A DNA stretch of 64,000 bases from Octopus bimaculoides (GCF_001194135.2 NC_068994.1:3187135-3251134); one strand, 5' to 3'. Counted from the stretch's first letter, positions 17,997-57,878 are shown. A program made the numbers and translations. The notes: a model not told the origin generated them from the sequence alone.

Positions 17997-19659
17997 CTAA
18001 TATATAGTCTGCCATAAAATTGTATTTAATGGGGTGTACTCTTTAACATTTTTACATGAATTAGCAGCAGTTGTAGTCCCAGCCCCTAAACCAGCCCCTA
18101 AAGTAGAACCAACAGCTCCACTCGCACTGCTTTTTCTTAGTTGCTTATGTGTTCGTCTGTGTCGTTGTAGTTTGCCCGTCTGGGAGAAAGCTTTACCACA
18201 CACTTCACAATGGAAAGGTTTTTCTCCAGTGTGAGTCCTTCGGTGGATTTGTAACGTGTCCCGGCGGGCAAACCTCTGGATACACAGATCACACGGGTAT
18301 GGTTTTAGCCCTGTGTGGGTTCGTTGGTGTAGCTGGAGGCGGTCCCGCTGGGCAAATCGGCGCATGCAAACTCCACACTCGTATGGTTTCTCACCAGAAT
18401 GTACCCTGTGGTGGATCTGTAGCTTATCCTTGCGGGAAAATTGCCGAGGACAAAGGGAACAACAAAACGGTTTTTCCCCAGAATGAGTTCTTTGGTGCAT
18501 CTGCAGTTTATCTCTCCGTGCAAACTTCTTTGGACAAACGCTGCATTGAAACGGTTTCTCTCCCGTATGGGTTCGTGTATGAATTTGCAAGTGGTCTTTA
18601 CGAGCAAATTGTTTCGGACAAAGTTGACACTGGAAAGGTTTCTCTCCGGAATGAGTGAGTTTATGGGTTTGAAGAGTATTTCGTTGGGCAAAACATTTGG
18701 AACATATATCACAAGAATATGGCTTCTCTCCAGTATGAGTTCTGCGATGCATTCGTAGCTTGTCTCTCTGCGCAAACTGTTTACAGCAGAAATCACAAGG
18801 AAATGGTTTCTCGCCGGTATGTGAACGCCTGTGGATTTGGAGTTTGTCATTTCTGGCAAACTTTTTTTGACAAAACTCGCAGGTGAATGGTTTCTCACCT
18901 GAGTGAATACGTTGGTGAATTTTCAAGTTGTCACGTCGAGCAAACTGCTTGGAACAAGTGTCACAGTGGAATGGTTTTTCTCCTGTGTGCGATCTCTTGT
19001 GAATCTGAAGAGTATGTCTCTGAGCAAACTGCTTCGGACAATCTGTACAATGGAAAGGCTTCACACATTTTACATTCTTTTCCTCACTGTTGTTGTTGTT
19101 GTTGTTGTTGTTGATGTTTTTGCTGATGTCATTGTTGCTGTTATTGTTGTTGTTGCTACTATTGTTGTTGTTGTTGTTGTTGCTGATTTTGCTGCTGTTA
19201 TTACTGCTGCTGCTGCTGTTGTTGTTATTACTAATATTGTTGCTGTTGCTGCTGTTGGTGGTGGGGGTGCTGCTGCAGGCAGGAGGTGTAGGAGTAGGAG
19301 TAGGAGTGATACAGTTTGGTGTAGCATTGTTTGCTCTGCAGCTACTACCACCACCACCACCACCACCACCACCACCACCACCACCACAGCAACTATTATT
19401 ATTGTTGGTGCTATTATGAATGTGATGATGATGATGATAGCTAATACTATGACTACCGTGGGGATGGTGATGGTGGTGGTGGTGGTGGTGAAGGTGGTTG
19501 GGAGGAAGCAGTGTCTTCGGGGAGGGGGGGTGGCTTACAAACGGTTTGGCAGCTTCTGGTTGTTGTTGTTGTTGTTGTTGAGGTTGTGTTTGTTGTTGCT
19601 GTTGTTGCTGTTGCTGTTGTTGTTGTTGCCGTTGTTGTTGTTGTTGTTGCTGTTGTTGC

Positions 19660-19692
<33 letters not shown>

Positions 19693-20171
19693 TGACAAGC
19701 TGATTCGGTAGAACTGCTTCTGGGCGACAGCAGAGACGGTTTTTCAATGGAGAGTGGTTCCATCACCTGACCGTGATGACTCTGATTTGAAATGTGCTGG
19801 TCATGGGCCTGCCTCAGAACTGACCCTTGCAGGGGACTTTGAGGGGGATGCGATGTGGTCATGTGAACAGGACTTTGTTGACAACGCTGGTCGTTCAAAG
19901 ACAGAGAAGCTGCAGCTGCTTGCAGGTAACAGTTCTGAGATGCGTATTGCTTAGCATAGATGTTGCTGCAGGGTACAATCATTGGTCTGTCGTGGGAGAC
20001 AGCAGCTTGGAAATAACAGCTCTGAGCAAACTGTTTGCTGCACATGTCCATAGAGAATTGCTTTTCAGCTGCATGTGACATCCTGCCATGTGTTGGCAGA
20101 GCGTAATGAGGTTGGAACTGTTGGCTGGGAACATTGCAATGGATGGTTTTCTCACTCATGTAACCATCCAT
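17997..20171 (-). CDS. C2H2 zinc-finger protein ZF-B (724 aa; 11 tandem fingers, polyQ/H/G/N linker)
   Basis: Uninterrupted ORF with 11 C-x2-C-x12-H-x3-H units joined by TGEKP-type linkers at 18147-19052. The in-frame trinucleotide repeats keep the frame open. Confidence 0.95.
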
Positions 20172-53793: not shown

Positions 53794-56700
53794 TTAAATA
53801 GTGTGCCACAGGTAGTTAGTGACTGATGGAAATTCATGGATAGGTTTCTCAGCCTTGTCTCCTTCCTCTGCTTCTTCTTCTTCTGTCCCTGCCGTCTCAG
53901 CTGACACAATATCTCCACCTTCCTGTAAGACATATTCTTCAGTCTTTGGAGAAACATCGCATAACATGGTCAATTCTTTCTCCCTTGTTTCACTATTGTT
54001 CTCATTCCCATTACCATTGTCACTACCGCCGTTATCATGAACTGAATCTTTATGAATTTGCAGCTTCTCCATATTTATAAACTTCCTACCACAGATTTCA
54101 CAGGGGACAGGGTGTATCCCCATGTGAGTACGCAAGTGTATCTGCAGGGTGTCCTGGCGAGCAAATTTCTGACCACATTTTTCGCAATGGAATGGTTTCT
54201 CTCCAGTATGTGTTCGCCTGTGAATCACTAAATAATTCCGCTGAGCAAAGTTCTTATGGCAGATTTCACATTTGAAAGGCTTTTCTCCAGTATGAATTCG
54301 AAGATGAAGCTGCAATGTATTTCGCTGTGAAAATTGCCTGTTACAATAATCACAACAAAATGGCTTTTCGCCCGAGTGTGTACGCTTGTGAATTTGAAGT
54401 TTGTCTTTCTGGGCAAACAGTTGGTTACAGATCTCACATTGGAATGGTTTTTCACCTGTGTGCGTTCGCTTGTGAACCTGAAGAGTATCTCTACGAGCGA
54501 AACGTTTCAGGCAGACTTCACAGCTGAATGGTTTCTCTCCAGTATGAACCCGTTGATGAATATGAAGGTAATATTTCTGTGCAAATGGCTTCTGGCAATA
54601 ATTACATTTGAATGGTTTCTCGTCTGAGTGTGACTGCATGTGGATGTGCAGATAATAACGCTGAGCAAACTGTTTCTGACACACGTTACACTGATGCGAT
54701 TTCTTGCGAATGTGTGTTCGTTTATGGATGTGCAATTTACTTCTCTGTGCAAACATCTTGTGACAAAAATTACACTCGAATGGCTTTTCACCTGTGTGAA
54801 TACGTCTGTGAATAACTAACGTATCTTTACGAGAAAACTTCTGAATACACATGTCACATTGAAATGGTTTCTCACCTGTGTGACTACGCCTGTGAATTTG
54901 AAGGTAATCTTTATGGGTAAACTGTTCTTTACAGATATCACATTCATAATGTTTCTGGCCAGTGTGTGTCTTTTGATGGACCTGCAAGTAATGTCTCTGA
55001 GCAAAATGTTTGAAGCATATATCACATTTGAATGGCTTTTCATTGCTGTGAGTTTTTTCATGGATCAGTAAATAATGTTTTTGTGCAAAATGTTTCAGAC
55101 AAATATCACACTGAAATGGTCTTTCACCAGTGTGGGAGCGTCTGTGGATTTGTAGAGAATCTTTCCGTACAAATTGTTTTGGACAGAGATCGCAGTGGAA
55201 CGGCTTCTCTCCTGTGTGTATCCGGTGATGGATTTGTAAGTAATAGCGCTGAGCAAACTGCTTCAGGCAGATCTTACACTGGAAGCTTTTCGCTGCGGAA
55301 CCATTGCATTTGGAGTCAAAGTTAGAGTCATGACTATTTGACATGTGGGGAGAATAATTATCATTGAGGCTCAATTGAAATGGTTTGTCTTTTTTAAAAT
55401 CATCTTGTAAATCAGAAGTTTCTAGGAATGAAGAATTTGCAAGTGAACAGTCATTATAACTGTTCATGGTACTGAGAGATGGTTTTTCATCATGGTTGGA
55501 ATTATTTTCCAGAGACAACTGCATTGGTGGATTCAAAGATTCTGGGAGAAATTCCTCCCCCTCAGTAGAAGTTTTGAGTAAATCAATTGATTTCTTATCC
55601 AAATCTATAAGCACCGGACCGACAGGCTCTTGGTGGTAACCCACAGGATAATCCTCTTTCTTATTGCTAACCAGATCGAGTTCTTTATCCTTAACCACTG
55701 CATTAGAAATAGAAGACACCACAGGAGTGGAATGGTACACTGTTTCAGATGACAGATCATTGGAACCAACATTATTGAGCATTGATTTCTTTGACACATC
55801 CAATGGAGCATTTTGATAATCAGAACTGTCGGCCATTTGTTTATTGTAAATGCTGGATTGAAATGTTTGAGTGTGTTTATTTGGCATGAAATGATACCAG
55901 CTGGGTAAGTTTTTGTCCCGTACAAAGCTGCTATGAACAGATATTGGTGGGTTGCTGTAGTCTTTGGGGTAAATATTTTTGTCGTTGGCTTGATGTGCTT
56001 GACTTATCTGAGACTTGGAAGTATAATGGTGATTGCTAGTAGACAAATCTTTACTGTCATACCGGTTACTAGAAATACTGTCTTTAACAATATTATGTAA
56101 GAGATCTTTGTTGTAATGTTTATTGTCAATGGTGCTTTCTGTGTTAGAATAAAATTTAGAGGTCTTCATACTCTGGGAATAGTCCCTGTTTTGTCTGCGA
56201 TGGGATGATTTGTATGAAATTTGCTTCAATATGGGATATGTGTACCTTTGTATGGTCTCTTTAGAATAGTTAATCTGAGATGAATCTTTGGTATTTTCTG
56301 GAGATATTGAAGACTGTTGCTCCAAGTTGTTGGACACATCTTCTTTGTAACTGCTATTTTGGTAGATTTTGTTGGTGCTGTCTTGACTTCTGGATGTTGG
56401 AAGCCGTTGAGAGTAATCTTTAGGATAAGCATCACTTTGAGACATTTTGCTACTTGTTGTGGAACGAGATTTGTGATGCTGAGATTTAGAGTATCTCATA
56501 GAAAGATCTTTGGAATATAGGTCATTGTTCTGCACAGTTTTCTCAAGGCCAGAGGACATTCTTTGAGACAAATACGAATGTCTTTGGGCAAGTTCTTTTG
56601 AGTACAAATTTGAATGGAAAGCTTTTTCAACAAGATGGGGCAAATGTAAGGAAGATCTTTGGGCAAATTCTTTCAAATACATATTGGTATAAAATGCTGT

Positions 56701-56880
56701 GTTATCAACTGTGTATGGAAGGCCAGTGATTGGTAAACTAGGTCTGCCATAAATATCAATTGGAAATGTTGGCTTCTCCATCAGGTTTGAAAATTTCTGC
56801 ATCTGTAAATTGTGTCTTTGGGGACAGTCTTGTCCACAAATCTTTGAACACAAAGTTTTATTGTCTGTATACTGTTCCAT
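53794..56880 (-). CDS. C2H2 zinc-finger protein ZF-C (1028 aa; 15 tandem fingers, acidic tail)
   Basis: Uninterrupted ORF with 15 fingers at 54037-55281 (the last is H-x4-H) and TGEKPF linkers. A splice acceptor (cttcacttcttacAG) lies 44 nt upstream of the ATG. Confidence 0.95.
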   Translation of the reverse strand: MEQYTDNKTLCSKICGQDCPQRHNLQMQKFSNLMEKPTFPIDIYGRPSLPITGLPYTVDNTAFYTNMYLKEFAQRSSLHLPHLVEKAFHSNLYSKELAQRHSYLSQRMSSGLEKTVQNNDLYSKDLSMRYSKSQHHKSRSTTSSKMSQSDAYPKDYSQRLPTSRSQDSTNKIYQNSSYKEDVSNNLEQQSSISPENTKDSSQINYSKETIQRYTYPILKQISYKSSHRRQNRDYSQSMKTSKFYSNTESTIDNKHYNKDLLHNIVKDSISSNRYDSKDLSTSNHHYTSKSQISQAHQANDKNIYPKDYSNPPISVHSSFVRDKNLPSWYHFMPNKHTQTFQSSIYNKQMADSSDYQNAPLDVSKKSMLNNVGSNDLSSETVYHSTPVVSSISNAVVKDKELDLVSNKKEDYPVGYHQEPVGPVLIDLDKKSIDLLKTSTEGEEFLPESLNPPMQLSLENNSNHDEKPSLSTMNSYNDCSLANSSFLETSDLQDDFKKDKPFQLSLNDNYSPHMSNSHDSNFDSKCNGSAAKSFQCKICLKQFAQRYYLQIHHRIHTGEKPFHCDLCPKQFVRKDSLQIHRRSHTGERPFQCDICLKHFAQKHYLLIHEKTHSNEKPFKCDICFKHFAQRHYLQVHQKTHTGQKHYECDICKEQFTHKDYLQIHRRSHTGEKPFQCDMCIQKFSRKDTLVIHRRIHTGEKPFECNFCHKMFAQRSKLHIHKRTHIRKKSHQCNVCQKQFAQRYYLHIHMQSHSDEKPFKCNYCQKPFAQKYYLHIHQRVHTGEKPFSCEVCLKRFARRDTLQVHKRTHTGEKPFQCEICNQLFAQKDKLQIHKRTHSGEKPFCCDYCNRQFSQRNTLQLHLRIHTGEKPFKCEICHKNFAQRNYLVIHRRTHTGEKPFHCEKCGQKFARQDTLQIHLRTHMGIHPVPCEICGRKFINMEKLQIHKDSVHDNGGSDNGNGNENNSETREKELTMLCDVSPKTEEYVLQEGGDIVSAETAGTEEEEAEEGDKAEKPIHEFPSVTNYLWHTI

Positions 56881-57061: not shown

Positions 57062-57878
57062 CTAAAATAGGAAGAAAGAAAGAGTCAGAAATATTAGAAG
57101 AATAGAAAACTGTAATTGTTGGTTAAAATAAACACCAAAATCTGAGGGATCACACTTCTTGACCCTTTCCCCCCACATGGTTACACATATTGAATCAGAT
57201 ATTGGAGCACGATGTGATCCTCCAGTTCACTGGATCCTGTTGGAAGCTTTGTGATTGAATTTAGTAAGCAGAAACTGAAGGCCCATTGTGTGTATGTGTG
57301 TGTGTGTGTTAACATCTCATGATACTTGTATATGAGTGTCACTGACACACAACTGGTGCCCCTGGTTTCCAATCTTTCATGAAGAAATGTCCAACCATGG
57401 GAAAGTATAACCAGTTTTGGAAACACGAGGGTTAGCAACAGGAAGGGCATCCAGTCACAGAAAATCTGCGTTAACCATGAAAGTATGGGAATTTTATCTG
57501 GCCTAAGCAAGTAAGGGAAAGATGGGAAAGTGAACATGATGATAAATATACATACATATATACACACAAGCATCTAGGCTTGTGTGCATATTTTTCCTGT
57601 TACTCCCCCACCTAAAACTTGCTTCCTTCAATTACCTCCCCATTCTTCTCTCCTATTCTTCACTGACATAACAATTCTCTCTCACTACTCACAGTCTATA
57701 TATCCACCACTTCACTACTACCACAATCACCACCATGGTTCTGCCAGAAACTGAAGGCTTCCCTTTCTCACAGAAAAATCCTTTCTCCCATTCTGTGAAC
57801 CATTCCTATTCATTGTTCACCAAAACAGACCATCTTCAGGCTCCATTGCCTCACTAACACTAAAAGGGAAGCACTTAC

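What the first reader, a model, noticed from the sequence alone, without database searches (positions are those of the whole stretch)
55825..56850. A ~340-aa array of ghost zinc fingers with systematic Cys2-to-Tyr replacement in ZF-C
The motif x-x-Y-x-K-[DEQ]-[FLY]-[AS]-Q-R recurs with the Cys2-equivalent at residues C15, Y44, Y68, Y93, Y122, Y152, Y178, Y205, Q230, Y256, ~Y274, Y304 and Y345. Most spacings are 24-30 aa, close to the 28-aa finger period. Examples are AFHSNLYSKELAQRH versus the intact PFHCDLCPKQFVRK, and FQSSIYNKQM versus FQCKICLKQF; EK linker remnants persist. Zn ligands are gone, yet the frame is open for over 1 kb and Tyr is retained in about 10 units. This suggests a finger array exapted into a new Tyr-Lys-Asp repeat domain (phospho-Tyr sites, aromatic stickers for condensates, or an interaction scaffold). 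ZF-B shows an earlier stage of the same decay.
Basis: partly seen in the sequence, partly recalled or inferred. Interest (0 to 1): 0.8.

Follow-up and report, generated by a model that had tools for sequence, protein, structure and literature searches.

The report
Zinc-free finger-derived tyrosine repeat domain
The N-terminal third of an octopus 15-finger transcription factor is a row of about ten former zinc fingers that lost their metal-binding residues but kept a tyrosine-x-lysine-acid motif, still under selection in a distant cephalopod relative, so it looks like a new protein domain made from old fingers.

Summary
The window is Octopus bimaculoides. The finding covers aa 11-352 of a single-exon 1028-aa gene (53794-56880, minus strand), named 'zinc finger protein 45-like' in O. 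vulgaris and O. sinensis. Y-x-K-[DEQ] occurs 8 times against 0.4 expected (0 of 20,000 shuffles). Unit spacing is 27.5 aa (CV 0.19). A profile of 16 Tyr units aligns to the protein's own intact fingers with Tyr on Cys2 (hhalign score 22.4; permuted controls reach at most 9.0).

Two distant orthologues of unknown species, from Logan contigs with saturated dS, carry the same array at a cleaner 27-aa period. Tyr is identical in 7 of 9 units. One unit pairs octopus Tyr with Cys, and another pairs octopus Gln230 with a Tyr-bearing unit. Lys(+2) and the acidic +3 residue are kept, whereas the Cys1-equivalent is not (3 of 9).

dN/dS is 0.14 and 0.15 in two independent close species pairs (pooled P = 7e-13), so the array is translated and constrained and is not decaying neutrally. 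Units 11-13 are not conserved. Pfam, the PDB and 1.84 billion representative proteins show no other relative, and AlphaFold2 gives pLDDT 36.

Finger origin and selection are shown. Function is inferred: most likely a disordered, multivalent interaction or effector module. The claim about ZF-B is only weakly supported.

The parts
53794..56880 (-). Complete single-exon CDS (1028 aa). Named 'zinc finger protein 45-like' in O. vulgaris and O. sinensis.
   Evidence: ORF listed. The same 1028-aa product is a called gene on O. bimaculoides GCA_001194135.2 CM046614.1.
56077..56856 (-). Deeply conserved part of the ghost-finger array, units U1-U10 (aa 9-268). U1 keeps Cys. U2-U10 carry Tyr (Gln in U9) at the Cys2 position.
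   Evidence: Unit coordinates. Orthologue alignments. Per-offset conservation. PSSM and hhalign tests.
56767..56856 (-). U1, TLCSKICGQDCPQRHNLQMQKFSNLMEKPT. It keeps two Cys (at C-x3-C spacing) and the EKP linker but has lost both His. C11, C15, C19 and H23 are invariant.
   Evidence: Among the top three PSSM hits in every scan (scores 12.7 and 13.9), above all 1000 shuffles. Invariant columns.
56620..56694 (-). U3, FYTNMYLKEFAQRSSLHLPHLVEKA. It is the most finger-like Tyr unit. Y68, K70, F72, L78, H79 and H82 and the EK linker residues E85 and K86 are invariant.
   Evidence: PSSM score 17.8 to 21.8, above all shuffles. Invariant columns.
56533..56619 (-). U4, FHSNLYSKELAQRHSYLSQRMSSGLEKTV.
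   Evidence: U3 and U4 also share a 43-nt DNA self-match at 77% identity.
56209..56532 (-). U5-U8 (Y122, Y152, Y178, Y205). Y152 aligns with Cys in the distant orthologue.
56077..56208 (-). U9 (Q230, where the distant orthologue has NIYTKDF) and U10 (Y256).
55801..56076 (-). U11-U13 (Y274, Y304, Y345). The motif is present in Octopus species, but this stretch is not conserved in the distant orthologue (22% identity).
55291..55800 (-). Acidic Ser/Asn/Asp-rich spacer (aa 361-530, pI 4.5).
   Evidence: dN/dS 0.15-0.32.
54040..55290 (-). Intact array of 15 C2H2 fingers (aa 531-947), orthologous one-to-one in all five sequences.
   Evidence: Pfam zf-C2H2 matches 15 stretches, E 3e-58. Alignment. 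dN/dS 0.01-0.03.
53797..53847 (-). Conserved C-terminal tail KPIHEFPSVTNYLWHTI.
   Evidence: K1012 to T1021 and Y1023 to W1025 are invariant in the five orthologues.
57062..57080 (-). Polypyrimidine tract plus AG. This is an acceptor-like site 181 nt 5' of the ATG, so the whole CDS would lie in one terminal exon. An in-frame TAA lies 27 nt upstream of the ATG.
   Evidence: Read directly. The X2 and X5 contigs have a similar ttttttttccag about 146 nt before their ATG. It is a consensus resemblance only.

Best explanation
The N-terminal ~260-350 residues of this 15-finger protein are a tandem array of former C2H2 fingers. All or nearly all zinc ligands are gone. What remains is the second beta-strand and the start of the helix, in the form [DN]-[IL]-Y-x-K-[DE]-phi-x-Q-R, repeated every ~27 residues. 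The former helix and linker have become a polar Ser/Asn/Gln/Thr spacer.

Shown here:
- The units are homologous to the protein's own fingers, with Tyr in the Cys2 register.
- The array existed before the split from a distant cephalopod lineage.
- It is translated and under purifying selection.
- The constraint is concentrated on Tyr(0), Lys(+2) and the acidic residue(+3).

Inferred:
- The array no longer binds zinc as fingers do, with U1 a possible exception.
- It is largely disordered.
- It works as a multivalent module. Ten regularly spaced Tyr-Lys-acid short linear motifs in a basic, polar chain would recruit a partner or self-associate, with Tyr and Lys as stickers or as modification sites.
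- It would therefore serve as the effector or interaction domain of a DNA-binding factor that has no other recognisable effector domain.

The Tyr residues probably arose by the one-step TGY to TAY transition. They were then fixed by selection or copied by unit duplication. The shared acidic +3 residue points to a common altered ancestor unit. The Cys/Tyr differences between orthologues and between paralogues show that some changes were independent.
For: Finger origin:
- PSSM scan against shuffles.
- hhalign gives 88-94% probability, score 22.4 against at most 9.0 in 200 permuted controls.
- tblastn aligns aa 4-159 to the protein's own finger array, E 4.5e-6.
- The period is 27 aa.
- EK linker remnants remain, and U1 still holds Cys.

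Real repeat: Y.K[DEQ] occurs 8 times against 0.4 expected in octopus, and 7 against 0.21 in the distant orthologue. No shuffle out of 20,000 reached either count.

Selection:
- dN/dS is 0.14 for O. bimaculoides vs O. vulgaris (24 synonymous, 15 nonsynonymous changes).
- dN/dS is 0.15 for X2 vs X5.
- The pooled binomial test gives P = 7e-13.
- The ORF, the start and the unit order are all conserved.

Motif-specific constraint:
- Tyr is identical in 7 of 9 units, and one further unit is a Tyr/Cys pair.
- Lys is identical in 6 of 9 units and similar in 8 of 9.
- The +3 residue is acidic in 8 of 9 units.
- The Cys1-equivalent is identical in only 3 of 9 units and is never Tyr.

Derived character: the +3 residue is never acidic in 41 intact fingers, but it is acidic in nearly all ghost units.

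No longer a finger: there is no Pfam hit in aa 1-527 at E <= 10 and no PDB sequence relative.

Consistent with disorder: AlphaFold2 mean pLDDT is 36. The region is 66% polar residues, with GRAVY -1.16 and pI 9.3.

Lineage restriction: only two 50%-identity clusters in 1.84 billion representative proteins carry the N-terminal region.
Against: - Function is entirely inferred. No partner, modification or expression data were available.
- The constraint (dN/dS ~0.15) is no stronger than in the neighbouring acidic spacer (0.15-0.32).
- Motif-core positions exceed non-core positions only modestly: 44% vs 33% identity (Fisher P = 0.08) and 61% vs 42% similarity (P = 0.01).
- Only two deep lineages were available, and the species of the distant one is unknown.
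- Units 11-13 are not conserved.
- The AlphaFold2 model used a 3-sequence alignment. Low confidence has been wrong before for a 'degenerate' finger, ZNF750 (PMC10465944).
- From my memory of ELM classes, the motif matches no linear-motif class I could recall, such as SUMO psi-K-x-E or the Y-x-x-phi type SH2, LIR or endocytic motifs.
Confidence: 0.55

Rival explanations
1. It is a slowly decaying relic. The array is translated only because the conserved start codon lies upstream. Its modest constraint is the generic constraint on any disordered linker (composition, solubility, length). The Tyr residues persist through ancestry and the mutational accessibility of TGY to TAY, not through a motif-specific function.
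For: - Units 11-13 have decayed beyond recognition in the distant orthologue: 22% identity and dN about 1.0.
- dN/dS of the array equals that of the adjacent spacer.
- The core against non-core identity difference is only marginal (P = 0.08).
- In octopus, U2 and U9 have already lost the motif.
Against: - dS between the two lineages is saturated, yet Tyr is identical in 7 of 9 units, while Cys1-equivalents, starting from the same kind of codon, are identical in 3 of 9 and are never Tyr.
- The +3 residue is acidic in nearly all ghost units and in none of 41 intact fingers. That is a directional change, not random decay.
- Purifying selection is seen in two independent recent lineages (P = 7e-13).
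- The ~27-aa spacing is preserved with CV 0.10-0.19.
Confidence: 0.17
2. The array is a basic disordered arm that binds nucleic acid or chromatin non-specifically. It retains the finger's phosphate-contacting Lys and the Gln-Arg start of the recognition helix, and Tyr could stack on bases. It would help the 15 intact fingers search for or hold DNA or RNA, rather than recruit proteins.
For: - pI is 9.3, with K+R at 12.8%.
- The retained segment is the K-x-phi-x-Q-R part of the finger.
- The array sits in cis to a large DNA-binding array.
Against: - An acidic residue has been gained and conserved next to the Lys in every unit. This works against phosphate binding.
- Net charge is only mildly positive (D+E 9.2%).
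Confidence: 0.13
3. Some units still fold as mini-domains. This could happen without zinc, with Tyr filling the former metal site as a core residue alongside the conserved Phe and Leu. It could also happen with alternative ligands, for example C11-C15-C19-H23 in U1 or H79/H82 in U3.
For: - U1 has four invariant ligand-type residues, and U3 keeps F63, Y68, F72, L78, H79 and H82 invariant.
- Fingers that UniProt calls 'degenerate' have been shown to fold with altered ligand sets, in cases where AlphaFold2 gave low confidence (PMC10465944).
Against: - U5-U13 have polar spacers in place of the helix and no hydrophobic Leu/His positions.
- AlphaFold2 predicts no beta-hairpin, and pLDDT is 30-57 throughout.
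- There is no Pfam match.
Confidence: 0.1
4. The Tyr codons (TAY) at the Cys2 position are substrates for coleoid A-to-I RNA editing. Editing would recode Tyr to Cys in some tissues and conditionally change the array.
For: Only that TAY to TGY is a single A-to-G change, and that extensive recoding by editing is known in coleoids (my own background knowledge, not checked here).
Against: - The other three ligands are missing in U2-U13, so editing could not rebuild a zinc site.
- No RNA data were available.
- The distant orthologue encodes Cys genomically in one unit, which needs no editing.
Confidence: 0.02

Closest known systems
'Degenerate' C2H2 zinc fingers in poly-zinc-finger proteins (UniProt 'C2H2-type; degenerate'; degenerate fingers of KRAB-ZNF genes, PMC2865497, PMC10465944)
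   Same: They are finger-derived units in tandem with an intact array, with loss of canonical Cys or His ligands. The origin is unit duplication followed by point substitution.
   Different: - Known cases are usually single fingers missing one ligand. PMC2865497 counted only units with at least two of four ligands, and some still bind zinc.
- Here about ten consecutive units have lost three or four ligands and fall below Pfam detection.
- They share new derived residues (Tyr at Cys2, acidic at +3).
- They are conserved as an array across a deep split under purifying selection.
Tyr-rich low-complexity or prion-like domains N-terminal to nucleic-acid-binding modules (FET family: FUS, EWS, TAF15). 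This comparison is from my own knowledge.
   Same: Regularly spaced Tyr in a polar, probably disordered N-terminal region of a nucleic-acid-binding protein. Multivalent Tyr 'stickers' are a plausible mode of action.
   Different: - The period is ~27 aa, not ~6-10.
- The motif is Y-x-K-[DE], not [G/S]Y[G/S].
- Gly is 1.1%, and 22% of residues are charged.
- There is no sequence relationship, and the evolutionary origin (fingers) is different.
Lineage-specific N-terminal effector domains of expanded ZNF families (KRAB, and FiNZ of cyprinid fish, PMC10547256)
   Same: An N-terminal, lineage-restricted conserved sequence attached to a C2H2 array. It is the presumed effector part of the protein.
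   Different: - KRAB and FiNZ are single short domains shared by hundreds of paralogues.
- This array is found in only one orthogroup (two 50%-identity clusters among 1.84 billion representative proteins).
- It is itself derived from fingers.
Zinc-independent finger folds (designed FSD-1; zinc-lacking Ros/MucR-type prokaryotic fingers). This comparison is from my own knowledge.
   Same: Metal ligands are replaced by other side chains in a finger-derived sequence.
   Different: Those proteins keep a complete hydrophobic core and fold. Most units here have a polar spacer where the helix was, and no fold is predicted.

Membership tests
C2H2 zinc finger (Pfam PF00096 zf-C2H2) | Four zinc ligands in the pattern C-x2-4-C-x12-H-x3-5-H | tested here: not met
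   U2-U13 have Tyr (or Gln) at Cys2 and Ser, Asn, Thr, Gln, Ile, His or Lys at Cys1, with no His pair in register. U1 keeps two Cys at C-x3-C spacing but has no His in register.
C2H2 zinc finger (Pfam PF00096 zf-C2H2) | Match to the family HMM | tested here: not met
   No Pfam family matches aa 1-527 even at E <= 10. The same scan finds 15 fingers in aa 531-947.
C2H2 zinc finger (homology, not membership) | Common descent from fingers: profile similarity in register, ~28-aa tandem period, linker remnants | tested here: met
   hhalign gives 88-94% probability and score 22.4, against at most 9.0 in 200 permuted controls. PSSM scan against shuffles. tblastn to the protein's own array, E 4.5e-6. 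Period 27.0-27.5 aa. EK remnants at aa 35, 85 and 113.
'Degenerate' C2H2 finger as usually catalogued | [quoted passage not shown] | tested here: not met
   Only U1 (two Cys) and arguably U3 (H79 and H82, shortened spacing) retain two ligand-type residues. The other units retain none or one.
'Degenerate' C2H2 finger as usually catalogued | Loss of zinc binding | not testable with these tools
   This needs metal-binding assays. PMC10465944 shows that sequence-based calls can be wrong.
Prion-like / FET-type Tyr-rich low-complexity domain | Composition dominated by Gly, Ser, Gln and Tyr, few charged residues, [G/S]Y[G/S] repeats | tested here: not met
   Gly 1.1%, K+R 12.8%, D+E 9.2%. The Tyr context is [IL]-Y-x-K-[DE].
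SUMOylation consensus sites (psi-K-x-[DE]) | Hydrophobic residue directly before Lys and acidic residue two positions after it | tested here: not met
   In the units the acidic residue is directly after Lys (K+1), and the residue before Lys is Ser, Pro, Asn, Leu or Ala. The consensus itself is recalled from memory.
Intrinsically disordered multivalent linear-motif array (functional class, not a sequence family) | Lack of stable fold; repeated conserved short motifs separated by variable spacers | tested here: inconclusive
   Motif conservation against spacer variability was shown. Disorder is suggested only by pLDDT 36 from a 3-sequence alignment and by composition.

The most novel reading that the evidence does not exclude
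A new protein domain was born from zinc fingers. A ten-unit, zinc-free Tyr-x-Lys-acid repeat is conserved across deep cephalopod lineages and acts as the effector or interaction module of its own DNA-binding array, for instance as a multivalent docking, phospho-Tyr or self-association platform. This would be a documented case of a poly-zinc-finger protein making its N-terminal effector domain out of its own degenerate fingers.
Probability: 0.4. Interest if true: 0.65.

Novelty: new variant of a known kind. Interest (0 to 1): 0.5.

Why it matters
Poly-zinc-finger genes are the largest transcription-factor family in animals and are hugely expanded in coleoid cephalopods. Where their non-finger effector domains come from is mostly unknown.

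This locus shows a full intermediate. An array that is still recognisably finger-derived has been stripped of its metal ligands and given two new shared residues (Tyr at Cys2, an acidic residue at +3). It has been held under purifying selection across a deep cephalopod split. If the Tyr-Lys-acid units are functional motifs, this is a clear example of domain birth by exaptation of degenerate repeats.

It also gives a defined, testable motif in an animal group with almost no characterised transcription-factor effector domains. It is a caution for annotation as well: Pfam sees nothing in one third of this protein.

Tried and rejected
- The search for homologous proteins with the N-terminal 532 aa and with a 3-sequence N-terminal alignment returned nothing. 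It missed even the 98%-identical O. vulgaris protein, so that index does not reach these proteins. Orthologues came instead from the search of protein representatives, the listing of cluster members and the look-up of encoding contigs.
- The species of the distant orthologues (Logan runs ERR3431203 and ERR12370320) could not be identified. No paper holds the accessions, and the Sepia genome paper gave no link.
- Pfam at E <= 10 and PDB sequences at E <= 10 gave nothing for the array.
- AlphaFold2 on aa 1-370 gave pLDDT 36. I therefore ran no fold search, because matches from such a model would be meaningless.
- Tandem Repeats Finder sees the 84-bp finger period in the intact array but no DNA-level repeat in the ghost array. 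blastn finds only one 43-nt U3/U4 self-match. The array is therefore old, not a recent duplication.
- BLASTP does not support the by-eye similarity of the ZF-B and ZF-C C-terminal tails.
- I considered SUMO, SH2/ITIM, LIR, Yxx-phi and KEN-type motifs from memory and rejected them, because the spacing of the hydrophobic or acidic residues does not fit.
- Y-to-C RNA editing was considered and ranked very low, because the other ligands are absent.
- Papers on cephalopod and metazoan C2H2 expansions (PMC12513265, PMC10547256) do not mention degenerate fingers or this motif. Several phrase searches for degenerate-finger literature returned little.
Full report
**What is there**

The window is Octopus bimaculoides, chromosome CM046614.1 of GCA_001194135.2. 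The finding lies in one uninterrupted 1028-aa ORF on the minus strand, 53794..56880. That exact product is a called gene in the assembly. Its 98%-identical orthologues in O. vulgaris (CAI9733419.1) and O. sinensis (XP_029644614.1) are named 'zinc finger protein 45-like'.

The protein has four parts:
- aa 9-360: the repeat region in question.
- aa 361-530: an acidic Ser/Asn/Asp-rich spacer (pI 4.5).
- aa 531-947: 15 canonical C2H2 fingers (Pfam zf-C2H2, 15 stretches, E 3e-58).
- An acidic tail ending KPIHEFPSVTNYLWHTI.

The ATG at 56880 has an in-frame TAA 27 nt upstream. An acceptor-like polypyrimidine-AG lies 181 nt upstream.

**Checking the observation**

| Test | Result |
|---|---|
| Y-x-K-[DEQ] in aa 1-360 | 8 observed, 0.40 expected |
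| Y-x-K-[DEQ]-[FLYM] in aa 1-360 | 7 observed, 0.07 expected |
| Shuffles reaching either count | 0 of 20,000 |
| Mean spacing of the 13 proposed units | 27.5 aa |
| Spacing CV | 0.19, against 0.88 for random placement (P < 5e-5) |

Three independent tests tie the units to fingers.
- A PSSM from the protein's own 14 regular fingers, with the four ligand columns removed, scores the units at aa 10, 63 and 88 above all 1000 composition-preserving shuffles. It recovers the units at 117, 147, 200 and 340 in register, with Tyr in the Cys2 column.
- Profile-profile comparison of 16 Tyr units from two species, excluding the Cys-retaining U1, against the intact fingers gives 88% probability and score 22.4, with the Tyr column on Cys2. 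Two hundred column-permuted controls averaged 5.2 and reached at most 9.0.
- Plain tblastn aligns aa 4-159 collinearly with the protein's own intact array (E 4.5e-6) and with that of the neighbouring paralogue (E 2.3e-5).

EK linker remnants survive at aa 35-36, 85-86 and 113-114.

**Related sequences**

A HMMER scan of 1.84 billion representative proteins with aa 1-530 found only two clusters. One is the Octopus cluster. The other holds two proteins of 1059 and 1065 aa (P0002 and P0005, here X2 and X5). They come from Logan assemblies of runs ERR3431203 and ERR12370320.

Their contigs are genomic, because they include an acceptor-like site about 146 nt upstream of the ATG. I could not identify the species. 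Synonymous sites against octopus are saturated, and the finger array is 71% identical, so the split is deep.

All 15 fingers are orthologous one-to-one, and so is the C-terminal tail. The N-terminal array is collinear and cleaner in X2. Its units sit at 15, 44, 65, 91, 117, 148, 173, 203, 231, 258 and 285, with mean spacing 27.0 aa and CV 0.10. Examples are DIYSKEFLQRHS, DIYLKDF, ELYAKDL, DIYSKEYLQRHS, ELYNKEYMQR, NIYTKDF and TYSKEYIQR.

Octopus IDIYGRPSL (Y44) is DIYSKEFLQRHS in X2. Octopus Q230 corresponds to the X2 unit NIYTKDF. Octopus Y152 (DAYPKDYSQR) aligns with a Cys in X2 (DRCQKEYAHR), which is direct evidence for the Cys/Tyr equivalence.

**Selection**

| Region | O. bimaculoides vs O. 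vulgaris | X2 vs X5 |
|---|---|---|
| Ghost array, aa 1-360 | 0.14 (24 synonymous, 15 nonsynonymous) | 0.15 |
| Acidic spacer, aa 361-530 | 0.15-0.18 | 0.32 |
| Intact fingers | 0.01 | 0.03 |

The values are dN/dS by Nei-Gojobori. The nonsynonymous fraction in the array is 0.39 against 0.80 expected under neutrality (pooled binomial P = 7e-13).

Across the deep split, identity is 58% in U1, 35% in aa 39-270, 22% in aa 271-360 and 27% in the spacer.

Per-offset conservation over nine units peaks sharply at three positions:
- Tyr(0): 7 of 9 identical, plus one Tyr/Cys pair.
- Lys(+2): 6 of 9 identical, 8 of 9 similar.
- +3: acidic in 8 of 9.

The Cys1-equivalent position is identical in only 3 of 9 units and is never Tyr. 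It started from the same kind of codon, so it serves as an internal control against a purely mutational explanation.

The +3 position is acidic in nearly all ghost units but in none of 41 intact fingers from three proteins. The ghost units therefore share two derived characters.

The signal has limits. Core against non-core identity differs only modestly: 44% vs 33% (P = 0.08) for identity and 61% vs 42% (P = 0.01) for similarity. Units 11-13 are not conserved.

**How the Tyr residues arose**

TGY to TAY is a single transition, and the motif Tyr codons are a mix of TAT and TAC. The shared acidic +3 residue argues for amplification of an already altered unit, or for convergent selection.

Some changes were independent or reversible. 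There is a Cys in X2 where octopus has Y152. There is also a Cys in the paralogue ZF-B (MCSKQFAQ) where ZF-C has Y68 (pairwise alignment E 0.008).

No DNA-level tandem repeat remains in the array, and only one 43-nt U3/U4 self-match is found. The array is therefore old.

**What it most likely does**

The array is no longer a finger by any membership test. It lacks the ligand pattern, has no Pfam hit at E <= 10, and has no PDB sequence relative. AlphaFold2 with the three available sequences gives mean pLDDT 36, with low-confidence helices only in aa 7-131.

The region is 66% polar residues, with GRAVY -1.16, pI 9.3 and 10% aromatic residues. The retained piece corresponds to the finger's second beta-strand and helix start (Y-x-K-[DE]-phi-x-Q-R). 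The former helix end and linker have become a variable polar spacer.

The best-supported reading is a disordered, multivalent array of about ten Tyr-Lys-acid short motifs that serves as the interaction or effector part of the factor. No other effector domain is detectable in the protein. This step is inference.

The main rivals are a relic under only generic linker constraint, a basic arm that binds nucleic acid non-specifically, and residual folding with or without metal. Residual folding is most plausible for U1, with its invariant C11, C15, C19 and H23, and for U3. Published work on ZNF750 shows that both sequence-based 'degenerate' calls and low AlphaFold confidence can be wrong for such units (PMC10465944). 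Y-to-C RNA editing was considered but cannot rebuild a zinc site.

**Comparison with what is known**

Degenerate fingers are well known in poly-ZNF proteins (PMC2865497; PMC10465944). The catalogued cases are typically isolated units lacking one ligand. This case differs in four ways:
- About ten consecutive units have lost three or four ligands.
- They share new residues.
- They are undetectable by Pfam.
- They are conserved as an array under purifying selection.

It works more like a Tyr-sticker low-complexity domain or a lineage-specific N-terminal ZNF effector domain (KRAB; FiNZ, PMC10547256). It fails the compositional definition of FET-type domains (Gly 1.1%, 22% charged residues), and it occurs in only one orthogroup. 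Papers on the cephalopod C2H2 expansion do not mention it.

I class it as a new variant of a known kind.

**The ZF-B claim**

ZF-B (17997..20171, minus strand) has a similar start (MDGYMSEK..HC against MEQYTDNK.LC). It has two or three weak ghost units at aa 10, 39 and 67: one keeps Cys2, and one has Cys1 plus Tyr at Cys2. The rest of its N-terminus is polyQ, polyH, polyG and polyN. It is a paralogue with a different fate, not clearly an earlier stage of the same decay.

**Verdict**

Finger origin, translation and purifying selection are shown, and Tyr retention is shown for seven to eight units. The mechanism is inferred. Interest is moderate at 0.5.

Noticed in passing
window 56767-56856 (-), aa 9-38 (U1): U1 carries C11, C15, C19 and H23 in a regular C-x3-C-x3-C-x3-H pattern. 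All four, plus G16, D18, P20, Q21 and R22, are invariant in the five orthologues. This could be a non-canonical metal site or a helix-face motif.
   Followed up: partly
window 53797-53847 (-), aa 1012-1028; also ZF-B C-terminus near window 17997-18040 (-): The extreme C-terminus KPIHEFPSVT[NS]YLW is invariant across the deep split. The paralogue ZF-B ends ...KEYTPLNTILWQTIY, which looks similar by eye, but BLASTP finds no alignment. It may be a C-terminal docking motif of this small subfamily.
   Followed up: partly
window 17997-20171 (-), ZF-B: This is a 724-aa paralogue with 11 fingers. Its N-terminal half is dominated by long polyQ, polyH, polyG and polyN/S tracts. It has 2-3 weak ghost-finger units at aa 10-90, one with Cys1 retained and Tyr at Cys2 (PCSNIYAKQYASQ).
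   Followed up: partly
window 57062-57080 (-); L002 ~215-228, L003 ~315-328: An acceptor-like polypyrimidine-AG lies 181 nt 5' of the ATG in octopus and about 146 nt 5' of it in the distant orthologues. This suggests a conserved gene structure with the entire CDS in one terminal exon and one or more upstream 5'-UTR exons.
   Followed up: partly
window 2974-4308 (+), ZF-A: This ORF has three C2H2 fingers flanked by polyH and polyQ tracts and by repeated 'AQIFPTTIQM'-like and 'VSTEVLPV' units. It is probably one exon of a different ZNF gene. The listed start is a GTG, so the true start lies elsewhere.
   Followed up: no
window ~7.6 kb, 26.5-27.4 kb, 30.3-30.7 kb, 37.1-37.7 kb: Runs of N (1911 in total) are flanked by (TA)n and (CA)n-type microsatellites. 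They are assembly gaps at simple repeats.
   Followed up: no
window 54779-55124 (-): Tandem Repeats Finder detects the 84-bp (28-aa) finger period at 76% identity only in part of the intact array, and finds none in the ghost array. This is consistent with the ghost array being much older than any recent finger duplication.
   Followed up: yes
L003 452-471: X5 has an upstream in-frame ATG that adds MNVSSI before the conserved MDPY start. X2 has CTG at that position, so the conserved start is the MDPY/MEQY methionine.
   Followed up: yes
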